Source: Monocercomonoides exilis PA203
Lineage: Eukaryota > Protista > Preaxostyla
Length of the DNA: 64,000 bases
Assembly (NCBI GenBank): GCA_001643675.2
Contig: LSRY02000034.1
Span: forward strand, 682,001 to 746,000
Direction of reading: 5' to 3'
How positions within the stretch are numbered: position 1 is the first letter of the stretch; every line of letters begins with the position of its first letter. The position numbers and the translations under genes were made by a program. The notes below the pieces were generated by a model. It searched no databases and was not told the origin of the DNA. It saw nothing but the letters and a program-made list of their open reading frames with translations. Below, one piece after another: positions 31,560-49,700 of this stretch.

Positions 31560-32346
31560 GTTTATTTTTCTGTGAATCTTATTTCTTCAAATTAGTTCTG
31601 ATTTATTTATTGATAAGTTATTTCGGAAGATATTCTTTCGAAAATGAAAAAAGAATTCTTAATAAATCTATTTTTTTTTCTTTTGTTTTCAATGTTGAAG
31701 CATTCAATGTGATAAGGATCAAAACACTTTCACAAACAATTAAAATTGAGTAACAATTTCATCTGGTTGAAATGTTTTGAAATATTCTGTTTGAAAAGTC
31801 GCAAATGAAAAATTTTCATGTTCAAAAAATTTTGACATTTTCACATGAATATTACGCATATAAGTGAAATATTAATATCAAACAAATATGAATAATAAAA
31901 AAAAATTCAATAAGAAATGATTGGCTTAATGATCAAATTTGACAGATCAATTGAAAAAATTCATGAAAAAAGAACTGATTTGAATGAGCATCACAGTTTA
32001 AAATTAAAGACTTTGAGACGGAATTATACCAACTATTTTTTTACAAAAAATTTTGTATAGCACTTTCAACTTTCATTTCAACTTAATATAGTTTAATCAT
32101 TTTCTTTTATTAAAAGAAAGTTACGTTTGTTGCTTTTTTCACAATTATTCCCAATCTTATTTTTGAATAAAAACAATGTAAGATAGGTTTGCTCCGAGAT
32201 AATGAGTATTTGATTCATTCTTTGGATGATTTGAGTGAGAACTTCGCTCTCTCCAAAATGATGTGGAAAAAAGGGTGAGATGAAAATATACACAATAACA
32301 TGTTAAATAATAAAAAGTGTATTATGAATTGTCCGCTTCACTTCAC

Positions 32347-32560
32347 CTCCGACTTCGCCTTTTCGCCTTGGTCATGAAAACCAGAGGGCAGGGGACATTG
32401 CCCCTCGGAGCTTTCTCCTGCAGGCAGTGTGAGGATCAGGTGAGGCGAGTCTTCTAGTCGGAGCAGAAAGAAAAACCACTCTCGCTTTCGCGAGGAGTGG
32501 AAAAGAAAACTGCGTGTGATGTGCTCTGCCTCCCGCTTCTCTGTTGCATCAGCAGAGCAA
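32347..32560 (-). ncRNA. Candidate cis-acting structured RNA in the DIRS 3' non-coding region, including an ENE-like U-rich internal loop
   Basis: GC-rich island with nested helices. The minus strand reads gcag UUUUCUUUU ccacuccucgc GAAA gcgagagugg UUUUUCUUU cugc. A long-range stem pairs cuccgacu..ucgccu with aggcga-agucggag. The GNRA loop and a G-U pair favour the minus (element sense) strand. Confidence 0.55.
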
Positions 32561-32965
32561 CCTCGATCATCACCCATCGTTTGGATTGCTCTGAATCTTA
32601 TGTGTAAAAAACAATCGTTATCATGTTGAGGAGAAAGCTTTTTGATAAATACTGTTTATTCGTTCTATTAGTATATTTCTAGATTCTAGACGCACACTAA
32701 TCACTTCGGGCGTTTGATCTTTCTTTCTCCTTCTATATCTCTCCCTTTTTCAAATCATCTCACCACTTGGATGTTGCTCACATTCGCACCCAGCCGCCTA
32801 TTATCTCTCCATCCGCATTCCTATTATCTCGGAGCAAACTTGTCTCACTGCGATCTATCAAATTGCAATAGAGCGAATTAACAAACGCAAGGAGCAGGTT
32901 TGCTCATCGATAATGAGTCTCGAAATCCCTTCTATTTCCGTCTGTGTGATCTAAAAACCCCTTTC

Positions 32966-34129
32966 CTAATACACTCTTGTGCGGCAGATGAGTTGAGAGC
33001 GTGCGTGGAGTGGTGCGGACCTCTTGCTCCACACCCTCTCTCTCTTGGGATCTCTTTGAGGCGACATTGGTCTGGCCCTTTCCTCTTCAGTGTTAGTCCC
33101 TATCTGTCCGATACTTCTTTCGCCACGTATCCTCCCATCTTTGCCTCTCTTCTTCGGTGGAGTTGTGTCCCTCACTCCAGTCAGCTCACAGATGATACTG
33201 GGGATTATGGAGGGTGTCTTCTGACGACTTGGTTGTCGGGGTGTAGAGCTTCGTGACCGAGCCGTTTCACCTTTTTTTCCTTCTTCCCTCATAATACTCT
33301 CTCTTCTTTTTGATTGCTTTCTCGTAAGTCTCTTCCCTATCTCAGATCCCGCTTTGAGTAATTCCTCTGTGCAATCTTTCATATCTGCATCTGCTATCTC
33401 CAGTGTCCCTTCCTTCGTTTCTCCACTCTTCTCCGGCTTGTTATCATATCCAATCTGATGTGTCGGTCCACCTATAGTCTCCAGGATCCATTTTGTGTCC
33501 TGTCCCTGAAAAACAGTATAATGTTCCTGGTCCACTCTCGAACCTGGCGCCCATCTCGCGTACGCATTAATTGCTTTCCAATCTGCAGCTTGTTGTCTTG
33601 CTAAGTGCGTTATCACAGCGTGTCTTATCGAGTACGCGGTAAATGTGTCGGGTATTCCGTTCTCTCTCAAGACAGCCACTAGTTCTTCCTTAATTCTCTG
33701 CAAGTTTGCAGGTTGCCTCTCCTTGATATCGAACCAAACATGTTCGTCTCTAAGGGTTGTCTTTGTATAATCCATCCAGCGTTGGAGCGCAACAACAGCA
33801 TCTATGCGTGGGTTTGGATGTTTGTTTATAATAACCTTAACCGTCTCCCCTCCAGATGTTTTTGTTTGTACTTGTGTCTGGACTAACTCGTCTTTAAATA
33901 TCGTTGTCTCTCTTCTCATTCTTTCCAGCTCTTCTGGCCTTAAAGCACAAAAAATCATTGTCAGGATGAGGGCTCTCCTCTGGAAGATTTGTGGGTCCAT
34001 CATATCGTGGGTGGATTCAGCCCATTTAGTGATAATTGTGAGATCCCACATCGTCTTGTATCGCTTGCCCTTTCTCGGCTTCTTACCCACATAAGTTTTT
34101 AAAAATATTTCTATGTCTTTCACATTCAT
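32966..34129 (-). CDS. Tyrosine recombinase of the DIRS element (N-terminus disrupted)
   Basis: Catalytic-type residues appear in order: LRPEEL (R), TKT (K), AYSIRHA (H/Y-x-x-R), ARW (W) and EHY (Y). Confidence 0.85.
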   Translation of the reverse strand: MNVKDIEIFLKTYVGKKPRKGKRYKTMWDLTIITKWAESTHDMMDPQIFQRRALILTMIFCALRPEELERMRRETTIFKDELVQTQVQTKTSGGETVKVIINKHPNPRIDAVVALQRWMDYTKTTLRDEHVWFDIKERQPANLQRIKEELVAVLRENGIPDTFTAYSIRHAVITHLARQQAADWKAINAYARWAPGSRVDQEHYTVFQGQDTKWILETIGGPTHQIGYDNKPEKSGETKEGTLEIADADMKDCTEELLKAGSEIGKRLTRKQSKRRESIMREEGKKGETARSRSSTPRQPSRQKTPSIIPSIICELTGVRDTTPPKKRGKDGRIRGERSIGQIGTNTEEERARPMSPQRDPKRERVWSKRSAPLHARSQLICRTRVY

Positions 34130-34845: not shown

Positions 34846-36291
34846 CTATCTCTCCATCCGGCTGAGTGCATCTGCTTCCGTGTTCTTCTCTCCCGGAAGA
34901 TGTTCCATTTGTATCGTAATGTCCAGGCTGTTCAGTTTCTTCTCCAATGCCCTCAGTGCTGGAATGAGCGATGGAACTTCCCTCTTCTTCTGTATCGTCC
35001 ATCTCGTGGACATGTTGTCTGTCTTCAGCCGAATCTGATCTTCCTTCTGTTGTTGCAGCCATGCTCCCATTCTCTCCAATGTCCTCAACACTGTTCTGGA
35101 CTCCTTCTCGTTTATCGCTAACGCACTCTCCCGGGGTGTCCAACTTCCGTGGACATAATTCTTCTCCTCTTTGTTCTCCCTCGGTATTGTTAACACTGCA
35201 CACCATCCCAGCTCTAACGCGTCTTTTATTAACTCTGCTGGTCTTGCTCTCTTCCTCAGACTCCTTTGTCTGTTCTCTTGCAGGGTTTTTCTCCAATGTG
35301 TTAATTCTCCCAGAATCATTGGGTTGACTTTTACCGTTCCCTTCCAGCCCCCGCAGGCTATCGCCTGCCTCAGCACGTATTGCATGCGCTTCATCTGCAA
35401 GCTTGCTGGTGTGCGTTGCAGTCTCACAAAATTCAGCCTCCCGAGGAGTGCTGCTAAGTCTCTCGTCTTTTGTCTCCTCCTCTCCTTTACATGTGCTATC
35501 CATTTTCGCACATCCTCCTTCAGCAGAACTGTCTTTCTCTCTTGGAGCGTCACTTCTATCTTCTCTGAATTCCACAGCCATCCCAGAAACTCCCCACTCC
35601 TTGTGGGTTCTAATTTCAGCTTCTCCTCCGACAGTATCCACACCAGATTTCTCTGGAACTGGGCTATCTCCTGTGAGATCGATCTCAATGCATCCCTGTC
35701 TGGGTGCATGAGGAGAATGTCGTCCAGATACATTACTAGCTTCACTTTCCACTGTCCTCTGATGAACGAGGCTACTCGTCTCATTATCTTCGTGAATACT
35801 CTGGGTGCGTCCTTTGCTCCAAATGGCATCCCTACGTAAGCGTAACATTGACTTTGAAAGCTGAAGCACAGATAGGGACTGAATTGCTCGTCCACTTTGA
35901 AATGTTGATAAGCACTCGATATGTCCGGAGTGGTCATCCAATCATTCTCTTCCAGGAGTTCCACCACTGTTTCCTGGGAATCCATCTTGAAGTGCTTTCC
36001 CTGTTCTTCCTCGTTTAATGCCATGCAATCCAAGATCTTTTTCCTCTTTCCGTTCTTCTTTAGAAACATGAATGTTGGGTTGAACCACTTCACCTCAGAC
36101 TCTGGCGCTAGCTTCACAACTCCGTCCTTCAATTCCTCCTCCAAGAGGGATAAATAATTGTTTGTCATCTCCGTTGTTCCCCGAAATTCTTGTCTGTGTT
36201 TTCTTTTTCGAGTGAGATTGGAGCCTAGGAACTCATCCATCGTGCTCTCACACCACGGCTCACTAACTTGACTCCCACAATCTTCTTCCAC
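34846..36291 (-). CDS. Reverse transcriptase-RNase H of the DIRS element (premature TAG before a frameshifted MT-like domain)
   Basis: RT: WFNPTF..KK.GK.KKILDC..LN, DISSAYQH, MPFG..DAP.VF, YLDDILL, FLGW. RNase H: KDALELGW (altered TDAS), INEKE, TDN, HLPGEKNTEADALSR. The downstream frame reads IVLVHPFL..ILILPAWRGQTW. Confidence 0.9.
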   Translation of the reverse strand: MEEDCGSQVSEPWCESTMDEFLGSNLTRKRKHRQEFRGTTEMTNNYLSLLEEELKDGVVKLAPESEVKWFNPTFMFLKKNGKRKKILDCMALNEEEQGKHFKMDSQETVVELLEENDWMTTPDISSAYQHFKVDEQFSPYLCFSFQSQCYAYVGMPFGAKDAPRVFTKIMRRVASFIRGQWKVKLVMYLDDILLMHPDRDALRSISQEIAQFQRNLVWILSEEKLKLEPTRSGEFLGWLWNSEKIEVTLQERKTVLLKEDVRKWIAHVKERRRQKTRDLAALLGRLNFVRLQRTPASLQMKRMQYVLRQAIACGGWKGTVKVNPMILGELTHWRKTLQENRQRSLRKRARPAELIKDALELGWCAVLTIPRENKEEKNYVHGSWTPRESALAINEKESRTVLRTLERMGAWLQQQKEDQIRLKTDNMSTRWTIQKKREVPSLIPALRALEKKLNSLDITIQMEHLPGEKNTEADALSRMER

Positions 36292-37881
36292 TCGTTCAGC
36301 CTATTCACTAGTCTCCGAAACAGTGGTTCCCTCAGTGGTCCAATTGCTACACGCCTCCTCACTTCTGGCGTCCTGATGCCATTCTGGATCTGCGTGTTCT
36401 CTTCTCCTTTGTGATTATCAACAATGGTTCTCTTTAACTCCCCCTTCTGATTGTACCCAATCGGGAATCTGATAGCAGTCTTAGAAGCTTTCGAACTCCT
36501 CTCCCGGTTCTCTTCTCGAAAAAAATCTCGCTCCTCTGTTTCATCACTCGGGGATATGCGGAGTCTTCTTCTGTGTTCTCTCTCCATGTTTCCGTCTCGT
36601 GGTCTCTCGGGATTTCTTGATCTTTCATCTTCTCTCGATCGGATGGACTCAGTGCCTCTTCGCTGTTCTCGCGGCGAAGCGCAGCTCTCTCTTCTTTCTC
36701 TGTCTCGCAGCAAAGCGCGACCACCTTCCCCCTCACTTCTTCTAGGCCCATTGGCTCGATCCAGAAGCTGTGCCTATTGCAAGTCCTCCCTGTATACTCG
36801 GGGAAGCTGGGGGGAGGGGAACTGTGATCTAGGCCACTCTCCCAGCTGATGCTGGGGCATGCTGTGGTAGGACTTGTGTTGATCTCCTTCTTTCCTTGAA
36901 ATTCGTGAAGCTCCCATCGAAGCCATGCTTTTGGAGTTTCCTGTAGGCGAAGCCTTGAGCGTTCCTGCCTGTGCTGTTCCTCCTTAAGCGTCCACTCCTG
37001 GAGGGGACAAAGCCGAAGGCTGTGAGAGAAGCGGGGAATGCTCCGTACACTGGAACATCCCACTCTGGACGAAAAAGCTAGTGCTCTCCACCAACCTCCT
37101 CAGGCTCTCTGGGACGTCCTTGGACGTTCCATCTTCAAGGAAGCACTTCACATTCTCTCAGTTTGACTGGGGTTTAACTATTCGTTGATTAATCCGGCTG
37201 ATACAGTCTGCAATCAGGGCATATGAGCAGAAAAGTCCCCTCAGTCGCTCCTTCTCTTCTTCATCCAAGTGCGTCTTCCTCAATTCTCTTGTTGCAAGGG
37301 CTGCAAATCGCCTTGGGAGCTTCAAACCCTGATTCCAGTGCGGGTTGAAGCAACTCGATGACCCGGGCGGCTTCTGGAGAATCCTTTCTTCCTTCAGCAG
37401 TGACCTTCGTCACCGCAAAGGCGTTCCAACTCGCATCAGTGTGTCTGGTGAAGAAGTTCTTTTCCGTTTCTGGAATAAACGTGTTTAAGATATCATCGTT
37501 TATAATAATCGATCCGACTTTACAGAATTCCATGAACTTCTTCAGCTCACCTGCCTGTCTCCTGGGCGTCAGCCATTCGTCTGTGAAAATTCACAAAAAG
37601 TCTTTTGATCTTTCCTGCTCTTCTTCCCGCTTTCCTGTTCTTCCGGAATCGCTCTCGCTGCTTTCCTCTTCGTCCCATCCCTTCATCTGATTACGTCCGC
37701 GACTGCCCCTCAATCGCTGTCTGTGTCTCTTCTTTGCGATCATCTCTGTATAACTAGTTTCTGACTCAGATTCGCTTGATCTCGACTGAGATCTTCTTCT
37801 TGGCCGTTCCCTCTTCATCTTTCTCGTTGGTATTATTCCTTCTGCTCCGGAGTGACTTAGTCCTCCTCTGTTCCTCGACAC
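36225..37881 (-). pseudogene. gag-like region of the DIRS element, frameshifted
   Basis: Several consecutive minus-strand ORF fragments lie upstream of the RT inside the element termini. The assignment is positional only. Confidence 0.5.
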
Positions 37882-38930
37882 TTCATCAATCCAATTTTCA
37901 ACTCTCTTGAGCCTTCAAACAAGATCAACGGTCTTCTCTTCGCTGTCACTGTCTGCCAAACGAACGGGATTTAGCGTCATCTCAACTGCGAACAATGTTC
38001 TGAACTAGAAGTTAATTCGATAGCGAAGTTTGATCTTAAACCACACATATTTTATGATCAAGACTCATTATTGAGGAGCAAACATGCTCCTTGCGTTCAT
38101 AGATTCGCTTTATTGCGAATTTCTGAGAGTTTATCCCACAAATTCAATTTTTCTGGAGTTTCAAATAAATTATTAAGTTTTCATCATTTCAAACATTGAA
38201 TAATCTCTTTTAATACTTCATCCTTTTAATTTTTTGTCCTTTTCTTAATGAAAGTTTTGGTCTTTTAATGCTTCAAAGAAAAAATTGTTTTTGTTCTGAA
38301 TATTTCTCAAAAAGAATGAGGTTTTTCTATTTCTTCTTCTTTCAAAGAAAAACACAGAAAAAGAAAATTCAAATGTGTTGAAATCTTCACAGATATAATT
38401 ATTACGGAATGAATTCAAAAGAAAATAAAAATTGAAGTGGTTTCAGATGAATCAAAAAGGGGTAAGATTGAATTATGAGATGTTTGAGTTACATGAATAC
38501 AAAAGTTGTGAATGAAAAGAAGAGGAATTAAAGGGCAACGACAACAAATGGCTGCCGGAAAAAAAGTTGAGAAAAAGAAGGAAAAAACTCTTTTTCAAGT
38601 TATTTCAAAGACATTTGAAAAACAAAATAAAAATCTCATGGAATAATTGTCAAAAAAACAAAGATTGATTTTTGGATTATGTTTTGGATAATTATCCAAA
38701 TCAGGTTTTCAGTGAAGCAACGATCCAATTGCAAATTCACTTCATGAAAAGCTCAAAAAAAAACAAGATTGAAGAGGAATTTCTGCTTCCTTTTCAATCT
38801 GGGTTTCACTCTTAATACTTGGTTGAACATTTCTTTTTTTTCAAATAGAAAATGGTTTGCTCGATTATTCGTCGGTTTTCACTTCAACTTTGATATTAGT
38901 CATTTCTCGGCTCATTCAGTTGGGAGTGTT

Positions 38931-41900
38931 TTAGCTGCTGATAAACATTATTTCTGAGGAGGTCAAAGATCCTGATTGCTCCTCTTTTGATTTTTCTCGA
39001 GATCCTTCTTGGTAGGTGACTGCATCAGACACTGTGAGAATCACGGCTCCAGCTGGGAATTTCTGGATGAATTCTCGTTTCAAATCACTCAGTGTTGGCC
39101 TTGCACTCTGTTTCTCACTCACCATCAATTTTATTAACTCACAAAAAGAAGAGATACCAATTGCGGCCATATCTGTCCTCTCTCCATTCACTATCTTCTG
39201 CCCAGCCACCTCTGCTTCATAATCACCAAACGGGATCTGGAGTGTCAGACACTCCCACAGCATCATCCCAATCGAGAATGAAACCGACTCTTTTGTTGCA
39301 TCCATATTTTTGTTGATCAGCAGCTCTGGTGCCTTCCACCTCAAACACTCTTTTTTGAAAAGTCCTTCATCCTCAAATACTAATGAGGGCAGAGAATCTT
39401 CATCGTCATCATCACTGGCAGAAGTTGCAACAGTCGATGATGAGACGGACGATGAATCAGAATCATCAGACAATAAGTCTGAATGCATGACAATGCAGAT
39501 GACCATATGCTCAGAGAACAGCACAATGTGCGGACTCAGATTGACCAGTGAAGATAATCCGTTTTCCATTTCGTCAAACGAGTGGAGTGCAAGATTGGCC
39601 ACCCAGAACAGGATCTGAGCAGCTGTCTGCTCCCTCTCCTGTAAAGTGCCAATTGCCATCTCCTTTGTTTTATTCCTTCCATGCAGCAGCATGAACAGCG
39701 AATCCCTCAAATCCACAATCAACTTCTCATGAGGAGACGAGCAGGCCATTGCATCCACCAGATTCGACATTGATGAGGTGGTTGGGCACAGATCCTCCCC
39801 TCTTACAAAAGTGGAATCTGAGTCAGTTGTTGAGGTGGATGAAATGGATGGAGAAGGTGTTCGCTTTCTTGTCTCTTCTTCTTCCTCCTTCTCATCCACC
39901 TTCTCCAGCGTCCACTCAGGGATCTTGTCTGAATCTCTTCCCAGAATATATTCTGTTGAGCCACTCTCAGATAGAAGATGTTCTGACGACTCTGAATGTC
40001 CCAAGCTTTTCGCATACACCCTCTTCTTAATCTTCTCCTCATTCTTCTTCTCTGCCTCTCTTTCGGCTCTCCTCCACTGCTCCTCAGGAGACATCTCCAT
40101 TGTTGTCATCTCAATCAGCTTTGGATCTTTTCTCACAGTATCATTCACAATCTCTCTCAGATCCTTCGCTTCATTCTTTGCCTTTCTCCATCTGACTGCA
40201 AGAATAACAGAAACGATAAGAACAATCAAAAACAGAACAACAAATATTACTGCAATTATAAGAGCCCATGATGATTTTCCTTCTTTTCCTCCCTCAGAAA
40301 TCCTTTCATCTCCATTCACCTTGGATTCACTTCTGTTCTTCAGAATCTGTGGAGAAGTCTCTGCCAATGGCTTACCAAACAAAATCATCACTAAAATCTC
40401 TGTTTCATCTTCGATGGTTGAAATATTTGCTGATGGGATTGTTCCAATCACTTCCGCTTCTGAAACAAAACTGTCTTCCTCAAAGGGATATGTCTCAACC
40501 AACTCCACATCTCCTGTTTTATACACAACTCTGAATGACAAATCGCAGGGCACAAAAAGAGATCCCTTGAATTTCACAACAACATTGCTGCCATTTTCAT
40601 TCACTGAAACATCTTCCAATTTGGGAATGAAAAATGGAGATGACCTTTCTCCTGCTATCCCTCTCAAATCACATCTATCATTCAAAATCCAAAGTGAAGA
40701 ATAATCCTTCACTCCATCTCCCCCTTTCAAGCTGGAAATGGTCAGTGATGCAGAATCTGAACAAATGATGTTTCGACGAAGAGAGGGATATTTTTCAATG
40801 AAAGGATTGTTGTTCAAAAACTCTCCTTTCTCAACCGTCACATCGCCTGCAGACACTGACAATCCACCTGATGAAGCATTCAATATTGTAATATATTTCA
40901 TCACCAGTGAAGAATTCGCTGAATGGACAAGCGATCCATTCCATTCACATATTTCTCCGAAATCGTTGTTTCTTTCACTTCCCCATTCTTTCGCAAGAAT
41001 TCCTTCAACTTCACACATGTGCATCGAAACATCTGCCGCATCGCGCACTTCTATAACGCTTCCTTTGCTTGACAGAGAATTACAGTCTGAACAGGAACAA
41101 TTGGAAAGAACAATTTGAACAGAAGTTGAAGAAGAAGAAAAAACAGAAGCTCCTTCTGAGTTCCTCGAACAGTTGTTGAATGAGGAACTTCCAATTGAAA
41201 TAGAACTTGAAGAAGAATCATTTATCGCAATTACGCAACCTTCAGACAATTTCACTCCATCTGCAGATACTCCATTCAATACAGCACTTCCATATTGTCC
41301 AATCTCAAATACATCTGTTGTTAATTCAATCTTTTCCAGTTTCATATTTGTGATTGAAACCTCATCTCCATTCAGAAGAAAATAAGGTTTCTTGAGCGAA
41401 AGCATTGATATTGAGCAGTTGTCAACATGAAGAATCCCTTTTGAAACGCTCAGCAAGGTTGAGTTGAGATCAAGAGGTTGATTGTTGTTTGACTCTCCAA
41501 CAGAAGAGAAGTCAACAAATAAAAGAGAAAGCTGGCCACTGAATTCATGAATGAGAGAATTGCCTGAATATGAAAATGACTGGTCAAAGTTGAATTTCAC
41601 ACTTTCAATCCGAACTTTCTCTGATGTTTTGAGAAGACTTCCATTTTTGCCAGCAATTGTTGAGTTCATATGCACCAAAGCGGATGAAGGAAATTCCAGC
41701 GAGCGGATGATCACATTCAAAGCATTGCTTTCTCCATTGATGATTGTTTCCTCCGACATCAAAAGCTGCGAATAAGATGATGGAATGATGTGTTGAACTC
41801 CTTCATTCATTGACTCACAAGGCTTACTGAACTCTCCACATTGCTTGCTATCTGCGTGATTATCCGCGATAGCTGAGACAAATATCGTCTCGCTCTGATA

Positions 41901-44900
41901 TTTCCCGACTCTCAGAAGAAGATCTTCTTCTCCCACAAATGAGTCTGTTGTGCAGCCCCATATCGCCAGCTCTTTCACATATGGTGTTCTAAAATCCAAA
42001 AGGAATTGTTCATCAACTATTTGTGTTTCAATTGAATGGCATCGAACATACACATCCCTTCCCCTCAATGCAGAGTTATCTCTGAACGTGATGTTGGATA
42101 ACACAAAATTCAGAGGCTGCTCAGCTGCTGAGATGCATTCCAGAAACAGCCACCCGCCTCTTCCTGTGCTCGAGCAGAAGCACTCAGAAATCGTGCAAAA
42201 TGAGCAGTCAAACATTCCTCCCTCATTCAACGCACAAAATATTCCACCTCCCTTTCTACACCTCGTTCCACCACACTTCTTCATCGTTGTGTTTCGAATC
42301 ACCATTTTCAATGGCTCATCAATATCCTCATCTCGGATGATCGGAATATCATCTGTTGCGTTTTGTGTAACTTCTTCGAATGAACTGCACTCAATTACAA
42401 TATCTTGTTCAGCTTCATTTTTTCCTCTCCCTGAGCTCTTTGCAACGCACAATCCACTTGCTCCTTCAAGCTCAATATTCTTCATCGTTAGATTTTTCAT
42501 ATTCAAAATAGTTGTTGAATGAACGGAAATAATATCTTGTGAAAAGCTAAGTGATTGAATTGCCACAAATTCAAACACAACTGTGCCTTCATCTGCCTCG
42601 ATCAACCCAAAGTTAATCATTTCTTCTTCTCTGCTTTCCTCATTTTTGCTGAATGAGCAGTCTTTCAGAGTCAATAGTCCTTCACTTGATCCAACATGCA
42701 TCAAATAGTTGACTCCACCTGTAAATGATGATGGAACAACAAAGTCAATTAGCTCGAAATCGGTAATTCCAGAAATCTTCATTGCTGCTTCTTCTGCTCC
42801 TTCAAGCGATGAGAGACACTCCAAAAAGCACATTTCTTCATCATCTGATTTTACTGAAATTCTACTGAGATCAACACATTTTTTAAGAATTCCTTTTCCA
42901 ATTATGTTGATATTTCTTTCATTTCCTTCAGGGAATCGATCCAATGAATAATCGATTGACAGGCATGGATAATCTGAAAGACCACAAATGCACACATCTT
43001 TTCCATCATTTCTGATAAATACCTCTGATCCAAGTGTGAACCAGAAATACACCATTGGAATAGCATTCGTTGTGTCATTCCCATCAAAGCCTCTCATGGA
43101 ATTTAATGAAATATCATCCAGATTCTCTGATACAAATGGAAGAGAGGTGTTTGTGATGCTCTTTGTCAAGTTGGATGATTCAACAAACAAGTCATTTCCA
43201 TATTTCGCAATATTTGGCTTATCTGCATCAAAAATTGGTGATGAGATAACAAACGAAGAATCATCATCAATCAACTTCAGCGCCATCCCTCCTCCAAATC
43301 CGATCTTCTCTTCATCAGCTGGTGCTGAACATCCTGTGAATGTGCATGAAATAATATCCAAATGTGTATTCCCTTTCAACTGAGCATATATTGCGCCTCC
43401 TCCGCTTTCATCAGAAAACACTGAGCATCTATCAAAATCACACTCTTCAATATTTATTTCTCCATTTGAATTTTCATCGTTGCTATTATCAATACTCACA
43501 CAGCCTCCACTTCCAGCTGCTCTTTCCATTTCTGAAAAAGTGCAGTTCGTCATGTTCAACCATTTGATGCTCATTGACTCGGTCTTTGTGCTGCTTCCAC
43601 ACAATGAGATCAATGGATTTCCATTCAAATCAATCGATGAAGCGGAAAACGTATCAATAGCCGAGGTTCCAGACTCAACAGATAAGAACAGAAATGTCAA
43701 TTCAGATGAATGATCTTGAAGGGAAAGAGAACAATGAGACAATGTCAGTTGTGAAGAAGATGATATGAAAGTTGAGTGAAGAGAAAACGAAGAAGGAAGA
43801 GAGAAGATGAGCTTTGATAATTCTGTTTCAACATTTGCTGTTATCATCGCTGAATTGATTGTTGAACTTGCATCGGAGACTGTCCAGCCACTTTGATCAC
43901 TATTTCCTCTGATTTCATGTTTTTGTTCTTCAAATGCCAATTCATCACTCATCATAATCATTCCACTCACAGTCACTTTCTTTGTTTCTGTTTGACGTTT
44001 GATGGAGTGCTTCATTGTCAAACAAGGGAATTCAACAATTCCACAATGAGAATGATCATATGCCTTTGTATTGCTCACAAAGATTTCTTCTGGGGTGGAA
44101 AAGAGATAGATACACAGAGGGATAGCCAAACTATTGTTTCCCTTGTCGTATCCTCTCACCTTGTCAAAAGAATCCAATGAGGCTGTGATACAAGAGATCT
44201 TTTGTGACTTTGTCGTTTCTTCCAGATTCGGAGAAAAAACAAAGATATCTTTTCCCCACTTAGCTGCGTTTGTTCCGAATGAAGAAGAGATCAGAAAATT
44301 GGGATTTTCGTTCAATAACCGAAGAAGGATTCCTCCCCCAAATCCATATGTTGCAGAGCAATAGCACCCGTCAAAAGATCCACCTTTCACTTTCACTTCA
44401 TTTTCACTCCCAACACATAGCATCATTGATCCTCCATCAGTAGATGTTGTGCTTCCACATCCCAAAAATGAACAAGAATCAAGATTCATGTTAACCTTGT
44501 CATTGGAAAATGACATCACAGACGCTCCGCTTGTTGTTCTCTCAATCCCATCAAAGGCACACTCTGAAAGTGCCAATGAAATCTCATTTGTTGAAGAAAG
44601 CGAAAACAGTGAATTTGTGGAAATCGTCTTTGCCCAGTTCACATGTTCCATCTGAAACATCCCATTCTGCACATTTATCAGTTCTGTCGAAAATGCTGTT
44701 TCTATTGATTGTCCGCTCCCAAAAGATATGTTCAGTCTGCTGATGCTCATTCCTCCTGCTCCACTTATCTCAAACAGCCTTGACCCACGGTTATTCGGAT
44801 GTGACGAGTCATGCACAACAACAAAGTCTCTGGCAGTCAATGTGCCTGTCGAGACCGAAAATAGAGACAGCCCAGATGCTTCAAATTCTGTGTGGATTGC

Positions 44901-46703
44901 TGTGCTCATATTGCTTTGGCCATAAACAGTAAAAGCGTTGATACCACATTCAAAACTATTCGTTTCGATTATCGTTCCTGAAGACACTTCCACATTGGGA
45001 ACCAAGTCTGGAATGAGTTGTGTGAGGCAACGGCTGATCGTGCTGCATGGATAAGATTTATCCAGCCCACATGCATATGAATCCATGGCATTTGGCTGCT
45101 TTTGTGCTGATGAGACAAATCTCACTCTTCCAAAATCGTTTCGGAGCCATTCGCTTTTGTCAACAATCTCTAAATAATCCAAGCTTACTCTGTTTGATGC
45201 TTGTCTGGTAGAATAACAGGTGGAATCAATGTTGTTTTTCGATGAGCCTTGAAGTGCAATGTCGTATCCTCCTTGTTCGCAAGAATTATTGTGGAAAAAA
45301 CAGTAGTAAAACAAAATTCCATCATTTTTCTCATTTATCCTTTGACAAGCTGCACCTCCTCCACTCTTGGAATAGCAATCACGAAACAAACAATTTGAAA
45401 TAACAACCTTGTCAATGCAGTCCCAATGCTCAACAGCACCTCCAGTGGATGAGGTTGTATGATTCACTTTGCAGTTTATAAAGAATGAATTAACAATACA
45501 TTGCTTTTGTTTTTTTGTCATCGTTGGACGAAGATCAATTGCTCCTCCATCATTTCCAGAGGAACAGTTTTGAAAAGAGCAATCATCGACAATTGGTTGA
45601 ACACATATGCTCTCTTCCATAATTCCTCCTCCTCCTGCATTTGTTGTTGCTGCAGCAGAACATTGAACGAATACAGAATGAAGGACAATGCTTTCCGCAA
45701 TATTCAAAGCATATATTCCACCACCTCTCGTTGAAGTGGCATTGCATCTTGTGAATGACGAATTTTCAACTTTCAGGATGGCATTTGAATTGTCGTGAAC
45801 ATAAAGAGCACCTCCTTGCGGTGCTGTGCAATCAGTCCATTCGCACAACGAAAATGATTGGCTATCAGTTATATTCATCTGTCCTTTTTTCTCAAGAGCA
45901 TTCATTTCTCTTTTTCCAAAGTTTATTGATGTGTTTCTGCAGATGAATTCTTCTGGCGAAAATGATCCATCTGAGATCCCTCCTTCAAACACATTCACAC
46001 ATGAATAAATGAGGCAGCCCTCCATTCCACTTCGAATGCAAAAATGCTCCATTTTATTATCACTGCTTTTGTCAGATTTCACAGACATGTTCCTGAATAC
46101 ACAATTAGTGACCTTCTCACTTTTGCTCTTTCCAGACAACAGGAAACATTCTGAAGAGGAAACAGCCAGATCTGTCATGATGGAATTTCTCAAATCCATA
46201 GAATTCGAATCATCAGATGAAAATACGAGGCTGGATGAATAAATATTCTTTTGAGGGATCAAACTCATGTTTGAAAGGATGATTGACCCACTTTGCAAAT
46301 GAAAAGGAGTTGTTGATTTTTGGAGTGAAATACACGATTCCATCACAACAATTGACTTATCTGTTATTTGCACACATGATGGAGAAGAATATTCAAATGC
46401 CAAATTTTTCAGTCCAACTGTAGAATTGTTGAATCCCAAAAATGCATTTATCACTGTAGATATTCCTGTCAGGCACTTTTTCACTCCTGGTGCATTTTGC
46501 TGTTCAAATGAAAGATTATCGTCTCCCTTTGATGGAAGTCGAGCATCACTTGCATTGCCTTGGCATGAAAAAGCATGATAATTAGAAATATCAATATTTG
46601 AGAGAATACCTTCGCTTTTCCATGTGGAACTTCCAGAAACACCTTGGATTTCAAACATGTTTGCAAGGAGCAAGCACGCCAAAAACCGCAAATGCATGTT
46701 CAT
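38931..46703 (-). CDS. Giant receptor-like single-pass membrane protein with a beta-helix-like ectodomain and a degenerate kinase-like tail
   Basis: About 2590-aa intronless ORF (first ATG 46703) with a signal-like N-terminus. It has repeated GGA(L/I)Y/GGGI motifs, four D...CG....PC modules and a TM segment (WALIIAVIFVVLFLIVLIVSVILAV). The kinase C-lobe motifs LRWKAPELL, FSIGMMLWECLT..IPF and RPTL are present, but GxGxxG, HRD and DFG are not. Confidence 0.85.
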   Translation of the reverse strand: MNMHLRFLACLLLANMFEIQGVSGSSTWKSEGILSNIDISNYHAFSCQGNASDARLPSKGDDNLSFEQQNAPGVKKCLTGISTVINAFLGFNNSTVGLKNLAFEYSSPSCVQITDKSIVVMESCISLQKSTTPFHLQSGSIILSNMSLIPQKNIYSSSLVFSSDDSNSMDLRNSIMTDLAVSSSECFLLSGKSKSEKVTNCVFRNMSVKSDKSSDNKMEHFCIRSGMEGCLIYSCVNVFEGGISDGSFSPEEFICRNTSINFGKREMNALEKKGQMNITDSQSFSLCEWTDCTAPQGGALYVHDNSNAILKVENSSFTRCNATSTRGGGIYALNIAESIVLHSVFVQCSAAATTNAGGGGIMEESICVQPIVDDCSFQNCSSGNDGGAIDLRPTMTKKQKQCIVNSFFINCKVNHTTSSTGGAVEHWDCIDKVVISNCLFRDCYSKSGGGAACQRINEKNDGILFYYCFFHNNSCEQGGYDIALQGSSKNNIDSTCYSTRQASNRVSLDYLEIVDKSEWLRNDFGRVRFVSSAQKQPNAMDSYACGLDKSYPCSTISRCLTQLIPDLVPNVEVSSGTIIETNSFECGINAFTVYGQSNMSTAIHTEFEASGLSLFSVSTGTLTARDFVVVHDSSHPNNRGSRLFEISGAGGMSISRLNISFGSGQSIETAFSTELINVQNGMFQMEHVNWAKTISTNSLFSLSSTNEISLALSECAFDGIERTTSGASVMSFSNDKVNMNLDSCSFLGCGSTTSTDGGSMMLCVGSENEVKVKGGSFDGCYCSATYGFGGGILLRLLNENPNFLISSSFGTNAAKWGKDIFVFSPNLEETTKSQKISCITASLDSFDKVRGYDKGNNSLAIPLCIYLFSTPEEIFVSNTKAYDHSHCGIVEFPCLTMKHSIKRQTETKKVTVSGMIMMSDELAFEEQKHEIRGNSDQSGWTVSDASSTINSAMITANVETELSKLIFSLPSSFSLHSTFISSSSQLTLSHCSLSLQDHSSELTFLFLSVESGTSAIDTFSASSIDLNGNPLISLCGSSTKTESMSIKWLNMTNCTFSEMERAAGSGGCVSIDNSNDENSNGEINIEECDFDRCSVFSDESGGGAIYAQLKGNTHLDIISCTFTGCSAPADEEKIGFGGGMALKLIDDDSSFVISSPIFDADKPNIAKYGNDLFVESSNLTKSITNTSLPFVSENLDDISLNSMRGFDGNDTTNAIPMVYFWFTLGSEVFIRNDGKDVCICGLSDYPCLSIDYSLDRFPEGNERNINIIGKGILKKCVDLSRISVKSDDEEMCFLECLSSLEGAEEAAMKISGITDFELIDFVVPSSFTGGVNYLMHVGSSEGLLTLKDCSFSKNEESREEEMINFGLIEADEGTVVFEFVAIQSLSFSQDIISVHSTTILNMKNLTMKNIELEGASGLCVAKSSGRGKNEAEQDIVIECSSFEEVTQNATDDIPIIRDEDIDEPLKMVIRNTTMKKCGGTRCRKGGGIFCALNEGGMFDCSFCTISECFCSSTGRGGWLFLECISAAEQPLNFVLSNITFRDNSALRGRDVYVRCHSIETQIVDEQFLLDFRTPYVKELAIWGCTTDSFVGEEDLLLRVGKYQSETIFVSAIADNHADSKQCGEFSKPCESMNEGVQHIIPSSYSQLLMSEETIINGESNALNVIIRSLEFPSSALVHMNSTIAGKNGSLLKTSEKVRIESVKFNFDQSFSYSGNSLIHEFSGQLSLLFVDFSSVGESNNNQPLDLNSTLLSVSKGILHVDNCSISMLSLKKPYFLLNGDEVSITNMKLEKIELTTDVFEIGQYGSAVLNGVSADGVKLSEGCVIAINDSSSSSISIGSSSFNNCSRNSEGASVFSSSSTSVQIVLSNCSCSDCNSLSSKGSVIEVRDAADVSMHMCEVEGILAKEWGSERNNDFGEICEWNGSLVHSANSSLVMKYITILNASSGGLSVSAGDVTVEKGEFLNNNPFIEKYPSLRRNIICSDSASLTISSLKGGDGVKDYSSLWILNDRCDLRGIAGERSSPFFIPKLEDVSVNENGSNVVVKFKGSLFVPCDLSFRVVYKTGDVELVETYPFEEDSFVSEAEVIGTIPSANISTIEDETEILVMILFGKPLAETSPQILKNRSESKVNGDERISEGGKEGKSSWALIIAVIFVVLFLIVLIVSVILAVRWRKAKNEAKDLREIVNDTVRKDPKLIEMTTMEMSPEEQWRRAEREAEKKNEEKIKKRVYAKSLGHSESSEHLLSESGSTEYILGRDSDKIPEWTLEKVDEKEEEEETRKRTPSPSISSTSTTDSDSTFVRGEDLCPTTSSMSNLVDAMACSSPHEKLIVDLRDSLFMLLHGRNKTKEMAIGTLQEREQTAAQILFWVANLALHSFDEMENGLSSLVNLSPHIVLFSEHMVICIVMHSDLLSDDSDSSSVSSSTVATSASDDDDEDSLPSLVFEDEGLFKKECLRWKAPELLINKNMDATKESVSFSIGMMLWECLTLQIPFGDYEAEVAGQKIVNGERTDMAAIGISSFCELIKLMVSEKQSARPTLSDLKREFIQKFPAGAVILTVSDAVTYQEGSREKSKEEQSGSLTSSEIMFISS

Positions 46704-49700
46704 TGTGTCAAGAGAACGCAATTTTGAGATTAATAATTAATGTTTTTTTGAAGGATCAAAATGGCCATAATTAATTATTTTTTCAATCCCTGATTGAAAA
46801 GAAAATAAATATTTGAGATTTCATTTTGATAATAATTCACAAAATATTTGATGAGGCCTTGGATTAATGCTGTTTCTTCATATATTCCGCTTCATGATCA
46901 GCATCTGGCAATATCTGAAACAAGATAATTAAAAAATATAATTGACATAAAATCAGAAGTTGAAAGAGAAAAGCATAAGTCCAATTGAAGCACTGAATGA
47001 GCACACCATTTAATCTCATTGAATCAAAGCCAAGGACATATTGAAAAAAGAAAATAGTTTTCACAAAAGTCCCACAAATCTGGCTAATGAATAAAAAATT
47101 AAGAAATACAAAATAATTCATCTCTTGATTCATTCAAATGATGAGCACTTCTTCACCCCATGCTCTGTTCTTCCCTGAAAACAAAAGATGAAAATCTTTG
47201 TGCAACAATTTGGTTTTTTGCAGAATGAAGGCCCATCAAACAATCCCTTTCTTCCTCTCTTCCTTTCCTCAATTTCTTCTTCTTCTCTCTCTTCTTTCCC
47301 TTCAGTTCCAATCTTCTCCCCACCTTTTTTGTTATTTTTTTCTTATTTATTTCTGCTTTTCCTCACTCAACCGACGCATCTTTGCTGAATTACACTTTGT
47401 TTTCTCTCCTTACTCTGTACCCTTCACTCAATCTTTCCGCTCTTAACGCTTCTTGTTCTTCCTCTTCATTCTCTTCTCAAGAAAACCTCAGATCAAGATG
47501 ATGCCACTCGATTTTCAAACAGGCAGTTTGCCTTCACAAAATTCAGGTTGATTCACAATCAGAACAGAAACACCACATGTGAAACGCATCGGCTGGTACT
47601 GAATCGAAAACTGGCTTTCAAGGCATTCAAAGATGATGGTTGTATTTTTTTGTTAACCTCACTTCATGAGGTGAGTGAGGAGCATTTTCAGCTGGAGCTC
47701 AAAGCAAGCCAAATACATGTAAGTTATTCACAATGGACTTGGTCGCAGCGCATGGGGTCTGCTGTGTTTTGATGCAAGCACAGACATCTATTCCGCTCTT
47801 GGCAATCATTTTGCTTGGAATGGTCAAAGCGAGCTGGCTGATAAACGCTTCATCTCATCTTCTGTTCATCTGAGTGGCTGTACCACACTGGTTGAAATAA
47901 CCAGTCATGCAAAAATTCAAGTGAAAGAACAATCATTTAACACAAATAAAAGAAATGTTTGCACAAACAAATACAATGCCTTTTCTTGATAATCGAATGA
48001 TTTTTTTATCCAGAAAGGGACAAATGCTCAAGTCTAGAAATAATATCATGGAAAACGAAAATCAAACCCCTTGCAACCTTCTATGTGGAGAGGAATATAA
48101 ACATCAATGCGAAAAACTGGGAAAAAATGCATTTTTTGTTTTCAACTCACAGGAAACATCTGAGCTTGATTCCAATTTGATTCTGAATATTCCATTCTTC
48201 CCACGCCATGTATCTGGCCTTATCGAAATCCCTTCTCTGTTCTCAACCAATCATTTTTCAAACATGTTTTATTGTTATCTTTAAATAAATTCTTGTTTCA
48301 GAGGCTGAGAATAAATGTGCAAATTCAATTGTGGCTTCAACGCTTCCTTGCTCACAAAACCGTGAAATATCTGTTTGGTCACCTTTCACATTTTATCAAG
48401 GGCATTCGAATGAATTTTTGTTTCATTTGGTTTTGATATTTTTTCACTCTTTGACGAAAGCCTGATCATCAGCCATACTGGATTGAGCGATTGAATGAAA
48501 ACAATCAATTAAGCAATGAGATGAAGAAGTTTTGGTTGCTTATCAAAAAAATAGATATTGTGAAACCTTCTGCACTTTATCTGCCATTGTTTTGCGGATT
48601 GCCCGCTAGAATTCCTTTCTCTCTGACTGTTTTTCAGGCATTTGTAATTTTCCCCATTTTGTTTGAAGAATGGAAATTGTCTGATTATCCCCAAAGTTCT
48701 GCTGCAAAATCACTGTCATTTGTGATAATTTCCCATCAGTTTCAGTTTGAGAGCATTGAGTGATGACACATGGGAGTTCTTTTCATCACGAGTGTTTTCA
48801 ATGTTTTCGAATTTGAATGTTTCACATGAAAGGAGCATATGTGGAATGAGTGAAGTAGTGTATGTATTTTTCATGATATTTTTATAGATTGATATTTTGA
48901 TATTTTGATGATTATCGAATTTTTTTTCTGAAAAAAAACTTCATTCAGGGAGATTGCAAGCAGGCTTCAGGAGGAAAACATGTGATGATTTTTGGGGGTG
49001 GAACAACTTAGCTGGGGTGAGCAAGGCATCATCAGTGGAGTTTCAATTTTGACAATTCAGCTCATCATTGACTGAATTTTTGATAAACTCGGAAAATAAG
49101 TTTGAAGCTTCTTCGGGCTTTTTTCCAGAGCAGTTGGCAGCACCATCGGCTTTTTCAGCGATTTGTGTTTCAGCTGGAGCGAGCATTCTTCATTGAACTT
49201 TCAGTGTTGAATTTCCCAGTCATATTTGAAGCAATAAATTGCAGTTTCATTGTCTGGCAAGTTGGCAGCGGCCATTGCAGAGTTCCGAGTGAGTGAAGAA
49301 ACTCACATAACAGGTGCTGTCGCTGCGAACAATTCCTCAGCAAAAAGTTGCCAATTCCAATTGTTTGCACCTCTTTCTGCACATTCGCATTTCATCAGAA
49401 AGACATTTATCCCAGTTCGTTCATTCGCAGCTGCCAATGACTGTTCTTTGTGAATCAACCTAAGCAAGCATTTTAGCTGAAACAGAAGAGCAGCATCAAG
49501 GAAATGAATGAAAGCGGGGCGAAATTAAATTTGAAGAACAGGAAGAGAAGATATTTGAGAAAACACAACTTTTTTGTTGAAGAAGCTGTGATGTGCTGTG
49601 TAATTGCAAATGGGGGAGAACAATGGAGGGAAAACCCAAAATAACCTGGAAGCATTGCGGATGCAGCCTTTCAGAAAGCCAGAAAATCAATCAGCAGTTG

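What the first reader, a model, noticed from the sequence alone, without database searches (positions are those of the whole stretch)
32463..32513. ENE-like U-rich internal loop in the 3' UTR of a DIRS retrotransposon
Seen: on the element's sense (minus) strand the RNA reads GCAG-UUUUCUUUU-CCACUCCUCGC-GAAA-GCGAGAGUGG-UUUUUCUUU-CUGC. This is a 10-bp GNRA-capped helix (one bulge) and a 4-bp closing helix flanking a symmetric 9x9 U-rich loop, located between the ICR and the 3' terminus. Known: ENE elements (KSHV PAN, MALAT1 and some plant/fungal transposon RNAs) have this geometry and clamp an A-rich tract or poly(A) tail in a U-A.U triple helix; the C-interrupted U tract resembles MALAT1. Inference: this DIRS may stabilise its RNA with an ENE. 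I do not know of that being described for DIRS elements or for this lineage.
Basis: partly seen in the sequence, partly recalled or inferred. Interest (0 to 1): 0.82.

Follow-up and report, generated by a model that had tools for sequence, protein, structure and literature searches.

The report
ENE-like U-rich hairpin in DIRS transposon
A jumping gene of the mitochondrion-less protist Monocercomonoides exilis carries, near the end of its RNA, a hairpin whose two unpaired U-rich strands are the best-preserved letters of its whole tail region; it has the shape of the known 'ENE' devices that clamp an A-rich RNA tail in a triple helix, but whether it binds such a tail is untested.

Summary
On the minus strand at 32463-32513 the RNA folds into GCAG / 9-nt U tract / 10-bp GAAA-capped stem / 9-nt U tract / CUGC (-22.4 kcal/mol, z -4.0). 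It lies in the 3' untranslated region of a DIRS-type retrotransposon (reverse transcriptase, RNase H, tyrosine recombinase, inverted terminal repeats, internal complementary region) of Monocercomonoides exilis.

The genome holds 86 exact copies of both U tracts plus the closing helix, against 0 for the reversed control. On a tree of 86 copies the U-tract columns changed 0.9 times each. Other T columns of the same conserved block changed 8.0 times, and the hairpin's immediate flanks 14-29 times. The recombinase proteins of these copies are only 37-77% identical.

The structural features that define an ENE are met. What is missing:
- no covariation in the helices and no strand bias in their substitutions;
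- no RNA data, so no mapped poly(A) site;
- no encoded long A tract downstream;
- no match in Rfam, metagenomes or four distant DIRS-like contigs.

I read it as a probable ENE-type A-strand clamp (about 0.5). The main rival is a protein- or RT-recognition element. This scan had already flagged and followed up the same motif on another copy in this genome (s1-468352).

The parts
32510..32513 (-). Lower (closing) helix, 5' strand GCAG
   Evidence: Paired with 32463-32466 in the MFE and centroid structures. 96.6% of cells are paired in 81 copies. 0-6 parsimony changes per column.
32501..32509 (-). 5' U-rich strand of the internal loop (UUUUCUUUU)
   Evidence: Unpaired in every fold. 1.9% of cells differ from the column consensus over the nine columns (1.6% at its eight T columns), with 1.3 changes per column on a tree of 86 copies.
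32476..32500 (-). Upper helix with GAAA (GNRA-type) apical loop
   Evidence: Changes per loop position are G 11, N 20, A 4, A 0. The helix is less conserved than the U tracts (4.5 changes per column).
32467..32475 (-). 3' U-rich strand of the internal loop (UUUUUCUUU)
   Evidence: The most conserved columns of the region: 0.6% of cells differ over the nine columns (0.4% at its eight T columns), with 0.44 changes per column. It is part of the longest run of columns with at most 2 changes (32476-32460) in 32325-32940.
32463..32466 (-). Lower helix, 3' strand CUGC
32460..32462 (-). UCC directly after the hairpin, predicted to pair with GGA at 32332-32334 and so close the downstream domain
   Evidence: 0-1 changes per column. 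The pairs U-A, C-G and C-G are kept in 81, 75 and 77 of 81 copies. The pairing comes from the MFE of an intact-ORF copy.
32331..32570 (-). Conserved structured block of about 240 nt that contains the hairpin
   Evidence: 76-91% identical in 90 of 97 loci fetched from DIRS copies. A structure taken from an intact copy pairs 87.4% of cells, against 38-49% when slid. Variable linkers flank the block on both sides.
32359..32363 (-). Conserved AAAAG tract, mostly unpaired, 100 nt downstream of the hairpin; the only A run of 4 or more between the hairpin and the element's end
   Evidence: the only such run. (A columns 0, 2, 0 and 1 changes; the 5' neighbours 7-14 changes). (unpaired in the MFE). Its role as a ligand is inference only.
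32811..32930 (-). Internal complementary region (ICR) of the DIRS element
   Evidence: Complementary to both termini: 32860-32923 with 38058-38121, and 32823-32848 with 32178-32203. Pairwise identity between copies is 0.86-0.92.
32178..32290 (-). 3' inverted terminal repeat; similarity between copies ends near 32170-32178
37980..38121 (-). 5' inverted terminal repeat
32966..34129 (-). Tyrosine recombinase ORF (387 aa)
   Evidence: Pfam PF00589, E 1e-09. 110 matches in the genome at 37-100% identity. All named homologs are from Monocercomonoides exilis.
34846..36291 (-). Reverse transcriptase / RNase H ORF (481 aa; the frame is broken in this copy relative to copies with ORFs of 1300-1480 aa)
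   Evidence: PF00078, E 4e-20, and PF17917. Open frames in other copies.

Best explanation
The 51-nt hairpin is a cis-acting element of the sense RNA of an M. exilis DIRS retrotransposon. It most likely works as an ENE-type clamp. Its two antiparallel U-rich strands, held between a G-C-rich upper helix and a 4-bp G-C-rich lower helix, would capture an A-rich strand. One strand would pair by Watson-Crick and the other by Hoogsteen contacts (U.A-U triples), and the lower helix would offer A-minor contacts. The most likely ligand is the transcript's own poly(A) tail, which would be shielded from deadenylation and decay.

The conserved C in the middle of each strand would split the loop into two short stacks of 3-4 triples, or form one C+.G-C triple. 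The adjacent downstream domain is closed by UCC/GGA directly next to the lower helix. That would bring the RNA leaving the structured block back to the foot of the hairpin, where a 3' tail could fold in.

Shown: the fold, its place in the 3' UTR, its copy number, and very strong purifying selection centred on the unpaired U strands and closing pairs.

Inferred: transcription through the motif, polyadenylation, triple-helix formation and stabilisation.
For: (1) Fold and significance.

[quoted passage not shown] The definition is from PMC7583470. The dimensions are like MALAT1 (5-bp P1, ten triples with one interruption).

(3) Copy number: 86 exact genomic instances of GCAG-U tract-N(16-40)-U tract-CUGC against 0 for the reversed control.

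(4) Selection: on 86 copies chosen through the recombinase gene or the block, the fraction of cells differing from the consensus at T columns is 0.016 and 0.004 in the two U tracts. T columns elsewhere give 0.039 (ICR), 0.14-0.21 (rest of the block), 0.15 (ITR) and 0.21-0.34 (linkers). Parsimony changes per column are 0.89 in the U tracts against 8.0 in other T columns of the block (Mann-Whitney p 7e-6) and 14-29 in the hairpin's immediate flanks. The longest near-invariant run of the whole 3' region is the 3' U strand plus CUGCUCC.

(5) Order of constraint: U strands > closing pairs > upper helix > apical loop. The loop positions changed 11, 20, 4 and 0 times, a GNRA-like pattern on the sense strand. 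I read this order as the one an ENE-type clamp predicts; that reading is inference.

(6) Depth of divergence: the recombinase proteins of the same copies are only 37-77% identical. 7 of the 8 copies with the longest open frames carry a perfect motif.

(7) Precedent: ENEs stabilise transposon RNAs in plants, fungi, a slime mold and a fish, and the Evade Copia element needs one for mobility.
Against: No RNA evidence at all: no run was listed, so the 3' end, polyadenylation and even expression are unknown.

No conserved AAUAAA-type hexamer follows the block (17 of 86 copies).

The helices show no covariation above shuffles. Sense-type G.U cells (27) equal antisense-type C.A cells (26), so neither the RNA level nor the strand is proven by substitution patterns. 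The opposite strand folds as well.

Both U strands carry a conserved C that cannot form canonical triples with poly(A). The lower helix is only 4 bp.

There is no Rfam match. The motif is absent from metagenome contigs and from four distant DIRS-like contigs.

The whole 240-nt block is conserved, so the hairpin may be one arm of a larger functional fold with a different job.
Confidence: 0.5

Rival explanations
1. The hairpin is one arm of a larger structured 3' UTR domain (about 240 nt) that is recognised by a protein. The protein could be the element's own reverse transcriptase or Gag-like protein (template recognition, priming or packaging), or a host U-tract-binding protein. In this reading the U-rich loop is a protein contact surface, not a triple-helix clamp.
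For: The whole block 32331-32570 is conserved well above the coding region. It folds into several helices that stay paired across copies (87% against 38-49% when slid). The hairpin abuts the closing helix of the next domain. The DIRS replication cycle needs 3'-proximal cis signals such as the nearby ICR (established knowledge of DIRS elements). The conserved Cs inside the U strands are easier to explain by sequence-specific protein contacts than by poly(A) binding.
Against: No protein partner is known or testable here. The mirror symmetry of the two pyrimidine strands, G-C pairs on both sides and an apical loop free to vary are just what a triple-helix clamp needs, and a protein site would not need them. 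Constraint peaks on the loop strands, not across the whole domain.
Confidence: 0.3
2. The clamp binds an internal strand rather than the poly(A) tail. The conserved, mostly unpaired AAAAG at 32363-32359 would pair with CUUUU of the 5' strand and lie along UUUUC of the 3' strand. That gives four U.A-U triples plus one C+.G-C triple, or simply a pseudoknot, and would lock the 3' UTR fold.
For: It is the only A run of 4 or more between the hairpin and the element's end. Its A columns changed 0, 2, 0 and 1 times, next to 5' neighbours that changed 7-14 times. It is unpaired in the MFE of an intact copy. A one-layer shift puts the two conserved Cs in the same layer, opposite the G (read directly from the sequence). 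Four consecutive triples can support a triple helix (PMC7583470).
Against: A 5-nt match is weak evidence. The strand roles would be the reverse of known ENEs. There is no co-variation, because all partners are invariant. The lower half of the loop would be left unexplained.
Confidence: 0.12
3. The signal acts on DNA or on the opposite strand. Candidates are a recombinase or host-factor site, a mirror-repeat (H-DNA-type) structure, or an antisense-RNA hairpin with an A-rich loop.
For: Both strands fold equally well. Substitutions show no sense-strand wobble bias. The two T tracts are a mirror repeat.
Against: The T tracts are direct on one strand, not inverted, unlike the binding arms of tyrosine-recombinase sites. 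The palindromic arms are separated by only 4 nt and are less conserved than the T tracts. The GNRA-like pattern of loop constraint fits the sense strand. By the standard DIRS replication model, the circle junction at the ITR/ICR, not this site, would be where recombination occurs.
Confidence: 0.05
4. There is no function of its own. The motif looks conserved only because the 3' ends of the copies were homogenised recently (amplification, template switching or gene conversion).
For: Cell counts on genomic copies reflect relatedness. The 3' block is much more alike between copies than the genes.
Against: Homogenisation cannot give a roughly 9-fold difference in changes per column between the U tracts and other T columns within the same 240-nt block. 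Nor can it give hypervariable columns directly abutting the hairpin on both sides.
Confidence: 0.03

Closest known systems
ENEs of transposable-element RNAs (Tycowski, Shu and Steitz 2016; Arabidopsis Copia93/Evade ENE, PMC12501189)
   Same: [quoted passage not shown] The proposed role is protection of the poly(A) tail.
   Different: The host is a metamonad protist and the element is a tyrosine-recombinase (DIRS) retrotransposon; neither was found linked to an ENE in the library I could search. It has a single domain with a long 9x9 loop carrying one C per strand, whereas those ENEs have U5-type loops or the double-domain form common in plants. The lower helix is 4 bp. It is untested experimentally.
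MALAT1 / MEN-beta ENE with encoded A-rich tract
   Same: Long U-rich strands interrupted by C, a short P1 helix (5 bp in MALAT1, 4 bp here), a longer apical helix, and an expected bipartite triple helix.
   Different: MALAT1 binds a genomically encoded, G/C-matched A-rich tail that RNase P cleavage exposes. Here no matching A-rich tract is encoded downstream, only a 4-A run, and there is no tRNA-like structure.
KSHV PAN RNA ENE
   Same: A U-rich internal loop that clamps poly(A) in cis through five U.A-U triples plus three A-minor contacts with the lower stem. It is located upstream of the poly(A) site.
   Different: The PAN loop offers five U per strand without C. Here there are nine per strand with a central C. 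This is not a viral non-coding RNA.
3' UTR recognition structures of retroelements (for example the R2 and stringent-type LINE 3' stem-loops bound by their reverse transcriptase)
   Same: A conserved structured RNA in the 3' UTR of a retroelement, far more conserved than the coding sequence.
   Different: Those elements are not defined by symmetric U-rich loops. No DIRS equivalent is described, to my knowledge (unchecked).

Membership tests
[quoted passage not shown] | Stem-loop containing an internal loop with U-rich strands on both sides, in mirror arrangement | tested here: met
   The 9x9 loop is UUUUCUUUU / UUUUUCUUU. It is exact in 86 genomic copies.
[quoted passage not shown] | One or more G-C pairs adjacent to the U-rich loop (A-minor platform) and a closing upper helix | tested here: met
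   The lower helix GCAG/CUGC has a G-C pair next to the loop, and the upper helix starts C-G, C-G. These pairs are kept in 73-80 of 81 copies.
[quoted passage not shown] | [quoted passage not shown] | tested here: inconclusive
   It is in the 3' UTR, about 285 nt from the element's end. The 3' end and poly(A) status are unknown because no RNA run was listed. There is no encoded long A tract and no conserved AAUAAA.
[quoted passage not shown] | U strands and adjacent pairs under stronger constraint than the apical part | tested here: met
   Changes per column: U strands 0.4-1.3, lower helix 1.9, upper stem-loop 4.5, apical loop positions up to 20.
[quoted passage not shown] | Forms U.A-U triples with oligo(A) and stabilises an intronless reporter | not testable with these tools
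   This needs melting, gel-shift and reporter assays.
[quoted passage not shown] | Helices supported by compensatory changes among homologs | tested here: not met
   3 pairs have a change on both sides, against 1.6 +/- 0.7 in shuffles (55 of 500 shuffles reach it). The covariation score equals that of the shuffles. All homologs come from one genome. This is a criterion for calling a structure, not a defining feature of the family.
Any Rfam family (release 15) | Covariance-model match | tested here: not met
   No relevant match at E up to 10, on 9 kb and on 261 nt.
DIRS-type (tyrosine recombinase) retrotransposon | Reverse transcriptase + RNase H + tyrosine recombinase, with no DDE integrase or aspartic protease match found | tested here: met
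   PF00078, PF17917 and PF00589 on minus-strand ORFs.
DIRS-type (tyrosine recombinase) retrotransposon | Inverted terminal repeats plus an internal complementary region matching both termini | tested here: met
   The ITR arms are 32178-32290 and 37980-38121. The ICR 32811-32930 is complementary to both ends.

The most novel reading that the evidence does not exclude
The DIRS 3' UTR forms a self-contained, MALAT1-like triple helix without a matched encoded tail. The two C-interrupted U strands would clamp the conserved internal AAAAG (C+.G-C plus four U.A-U triples), and possibly the poly(A) tail in the lower half of the loop. That would lock a roughly 240-nt multi-helix fold serving both as an RNA-stability device and as the recognition platform for reverse transcription. 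It would be a hybrid of ENE and retroelement 3' recognition structure, in a transposon class and a eukaryotic supergroup where neither is described.
Probability: 0.12. Interest if true: 0.8.

Novelty: new variant of a known kind. Interest (0 to 1): 0.55.

Why it matters
ENE triple helices are known from herpesvirus and dicistrovirus RNAs, vertebrate MALAT1/MEN-beta, and transposons of plants, fungi, a slime mold and one fish.

A working ENE in a tyrosine-recombinase retrotransposon of an oxymonad would extend the device to a new transposon class and to Metamonada. That would argue either for repeated independent invention or for great age. It would also add a natural single-domain ENE with long, C-interrupted strands that is not tied to an encoded tail.

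The system is unusually clean for study. One genome holds dozens of diverged copies, and in them the unpaired U strands are the most constrained letters of the 3' region, even more than the ICR that the DIRS replication model calls for.

For M. exilis biology, it points to RNA decay as a pressure acting on its most abundant recombinase-type retroelement.

Tried and rejected
(1) RNA evidence. The look-up of sequencing runs listed no RNA run, so read laying could not be used. Expression and the 3' end stay open.

(2) Relatives outside the genome.
- The word-based protein search found only M. exilis proteins.
- The exhaustive HMMER search found the nearest foreign recombinase at 34% identity.
- Its contig and three other DIRS-like metagenome contigs have no U-rich hairpin after the recombinase gene.
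- The exact full-motif pattern has 0 metagenome hits.

(3) Covariation. None beyond shuffles, and no strand bias of wobble-type changes.

(4) A MALAT1-type encoded A-rich tail. None is present downstream.

(5) A 5'-3' pairing partner. Sense 37849-37833 is complementary to 32475-32459. It occurs within 2 mismatches only in about 6-10 copies of the window's own subfamily and not in the long-ORF copies, so I rejected it as a family-wide feature.

(6) RNAalifold on the whole block did not return the hairpin. It proposed instead that the 3' arm of the upper helix pairs with a downstream partial duplicate (ACUCGC). I kept this as a possible alternative conformer only, because single-sequence MFE and centroid folds of the 67-nt hairpin, and the MFE of the intact copy's block, keep it; in the window copy's 251-nt block the centroid keeps the whole hairpin but the MFE drops the lower helix.

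(7) DIRS loci lacking the block (6 of 97) hold no variant ENE; I take them to be truncated copies.

(8) Tycowski et al. 2016 and Brown et al. 2014 could not be read. The transposon class of the published slime-mold ENE is therefore unknown to me.

Full report
**What is there**

On the minus strand, 32513 to 32463 reads GCAG, UUUUCUUUU, an 11/10-nt helix capped by GAAA, UUUUUCUUU, CUGC. The energy is -22.4 kcal/mol, against -10.9 +/- 2.9 for shuffles (z -4.0). A deliberately loose ENE descriptor finds this motif and one marginal other hit in the 64-kb window. Markov shuffles give 0.7 hits, and this motif far exceeds the descriptor's minimum.

**Context**

The minus strand between about 32178 and 38121 carries several features:
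- ORFs with reverse transcriptase (PF00078), RNase H (PF17917) and a tyrosine recombinase (PF00589);
- inverted terminal repeats at 32178-32290 and 37980-38121;
- an internal region, 32811-32930, complementary to both termini.

This is the DIRS architecture. The hairpin sits between the ICR and the 3' ITR, 173 nt before the ITR and about 285 nt before the point where copies stop being alike. All named homologs of the recombinase are Monocercomonoides exilis proteins on contigs of matching length. The assembly is 82.3 Mb in 101 contigs. The organism named in earlier scan notes is therefore confirmed.

**Population of copies**

The recombinase gene matches 110 places in the genome (410 candidates), at 37-100% protein identity. 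Of 97 loci fetched through the motif region or the recombinase gene, 90 hold a roughly 240-nt block (32331-32570) at 76-91% nucleotide identity. The pattern GCAG-T4CT4-N(16-40)-T5CT3-CTGC occurs 86 times exactly, always 51-52 nt long. The reversed control gives 0. Seven of the eight copies with the longest open frames (1324-1482 aa) have a perfect motif.

**Constraint**

I aligned 86 distinct copies over 870 nt.
- In the two U strands, T columns differ from the column consensus in 1.6% and 0.4% of cells.
- T columns elsewhere differ in 3.9% (ICR), 14-21% (rest of the block), 15% (ITR) and 21-34% (linkers).

Cells count relatedness, so I also counted parsimony changes on a FastTree tree:

| Region | Changes per column |
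|---|---|
| U strands | 0.89 |
| Other T columns of the block | 8.0 (Mann-Whitney p 7e-6) |
| T columns of the ICR | 2.25 (not significantly different from the U strands) |
| Upper stem-loop | 4.5 |
| Eight columns just 5' of the hairpin | 2-29 |
| Four columns beyond the UCC that follows the hairpin on its 3' side | 14-24 |

The longest run of columns with at most two changes anywhere in 32325-32940 is G + the 3' U strand + CUGC + UCC (32476-32460). The second longest is CAG + most of the 5' U strand. The apical loop positions changed 11, 20, 4 and 0 times, which is GNRA-like on the sense strand.

The discrete, sharply bounded unit under selection is therefore the hairpin. Within it, the formally unpaired strands and the closing pairs are the most constrained. 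Recent homogenisation of 3' ends cannot produce such a contrast within 60 nt.

**What the comparison does not show**

The helices are paired in 89.5% of cells, against 23-50% for slid partners. They show no more double changes or pair types than shuffles. Sense-compatible G.U cells (27) equal antisense-compatible C.A cells (26), as expected if most variation is decay of dead copies. The opposite strand folds as well. RNA-level function and the strand are therefore inferred from gene orientation and from the loop pattern, not proven.

The window copy is unusual. Its U-A pair at the fifth position of the upper helix is found in only 8 of 81 copies. The common form has G.A and folds as 4 bp, a 2x1 loop and 5 bp (-20.4 kcal/mol, z -3.3).

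**Wider fold**

The MFE of the block from an intact-ORF copy keeps the hairpin. Directly after CUGC it starts a helix, UCC(G) with (C)GGA at 32334-32332, that closes a multi-helix downstream domain. Laid on 81 copies, that structure pairs 87.4% of cells (38-49% when slid), with slight excess covariation (5-15 of 500 shuffles reach it). The UCC/GGA pairs are kept in 75-81 copies. If this fold is right, the RNA leaves the structured block at the foot of the hairpin, followed by an AU-rich variable linker and the ITR. That is a favourable geometry for a 3' tail to fold back. This step is inference.

RNAalifold on the whole alignment instead pairs the 3' arm of the upper helix with a downstream partial duplicate. 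I treat this as a possible alternative conformer.

**The ligand question**

Downstream of the hairpin, within the element, the only A run of four or more is AAAA(G) at 32363-32359. A MALAT1-type encoded, matched A-rich tail is therefore absent. Poly(A) is the default candidate, but nothing here shows polyadenylation. Only 17 of 86 copies have AAUAAA after the block, and the organism's poly(A) signal is unknown to me.

Both U strands carry a conserved C. In register the two Cs are one layer apart, which gives stacks of 3 and 4 U.A-U triples with poly(A). That is consistent with published remarks that natural stacks are short and that four triples suffice.

With a one-layer shift the two Cs share a layer. 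The conserved, mostly unpaired AAAAG then fits both strands: Watson-Crick with CUUUU, Hoogsteen with UUUUC. Its A columns changed only 0-2 times, next to variable neighbours. This is an attractive but weak lead, because the match is only 5 nt.

A 17-nt complement in the 5' region (37849-37833) is confined to the window's own subfamily, and I dropped it.

**Outside this genome**

Nothing related was found.
- Rfam: no match.
- Metagenome contigs: the full pattern gave 0 hits. The 17-nt core gave only chance hits.
- Protein searches: the nearest foreign recombinase is 34% identical. Four distant DIRS-like contigs have no such hairpin.

The motif is therefore specific to this DIRS lineage as far as the data reach, and deep covariation cannot be obtained yet.

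**Literature**

Reviews state that more than 200 ENE-type elements are predicted, including transposons of plants, fungi, a slime mold and stickleback. They define the class as a stem-loop with a U-rich internal loop next to G-C pairs. The Evade Copia element needs its ENE, placed in a spacer before the 3' LTR, for RNA stability and mobility. Searches combining DIRS, or Monocercomonoides, with ENE or triple helix found nothing relevant. The 2016 primary paper could not be read, so I cannot exclude that its slime-mold case is a DIRS.

**Verdict**

| Reading | Odds |
|---|---|
| ENE-type clamp for an A-rich strand, most likely the poly(A) tail | 0.5 |
| Protein or RT recognition arm of the structured 3' domain | 0.3 |
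| Internal AAAAG triple helix or pseudoknot | 0.12 |
| DNA-level or antisense element | 0.05 |
| No function | 0.03 |

If it is an ENE, it is a new variant: a single domain with long, C-interrupted strands and a 4-bp lower helix, in a new transposon class and a new eukaryotic group.

The same motif on another copy in this genome was already flagged and followed up in this scan with the same reading (s1-468352). This report is therefore not an independent discovery. What it adds:
- the tree-based constraint map;
- the negative strand-bias and covariation tests;
- the negative search for an encoded A tail and for a 5' partner;
- the AAAAG lead.

**Limits**

- No reads tool could be used.

Noticed in passing
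window 32359-32363 (minus strand): A short AAAAG tract is nearly invariant among 86 copies (A columns 0-2 changes), while its 5' neighbours vary (7-14 changes). It is unpaired in the MFE of an intact copy. It is complementary to CUUUU of the 5' U strand. One copy (L074) has expanded it to A12.
   Followed up: partly
window 37833-37849 versus 32459-32475: A 17-nt stretch near the element's 5' end is complementary (15 of 17) to the 3' U strand plus CUGCUCCG. It is found only in about 6-10 copies of the window's own subfamily, not in the long-ORF copies.
   Followed up: partly
window 32443-32450 versus 32476-32485 (minus strand): Downstream ACUCGCC partly duplicates the 5' arm of the upper helix and could pair with the 3' arm instead. 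This is RNAalifold's preferred pairing on the 81-copy alignment, so it is a possible alternative conformer.
   Followed up: partly
window 32331-32462 and 32514-32570 (minus strand): The hairpin is embedded in a multi-helix block. Its parts include an upstream CUGCUG/CAGCAG hairpin, a GGAG-loop-CUCC hairpin, a GGGG-loop-CCCC hairpin, a GGUC-UUCG-type hairpin and a long closing helix. These stay paired in 83-97% of cells across copies. One pair (alignment columns 148/243) switches among G-C, G-U, U-A and A-U.
   Followed up: partly
G000, DIRS copies listed: Many copies with long open frames (up to 1482 aa) show exactly one or two in-frame TAG codons within the recombinase match. This may be a shared stop position or read-through site, or an artefact of the query's longer C-terminus.
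   Followed up: no
L098:2150-2700: The nearest foreign DIRS-like recombinase (34% identity; Logan contig from ERR14656777; 62% G+C) is followed by about five tandem repeats of roughly 110 nt, rich in purines. This 3' region is quite different from that of the M. exilis element.
   Followed up: no
window 38931-46721 (minus strand): An uninterrupted 2596-aa open reading frame lies directly beside the element's 5' end. I did not examine it.
   Followed up: no
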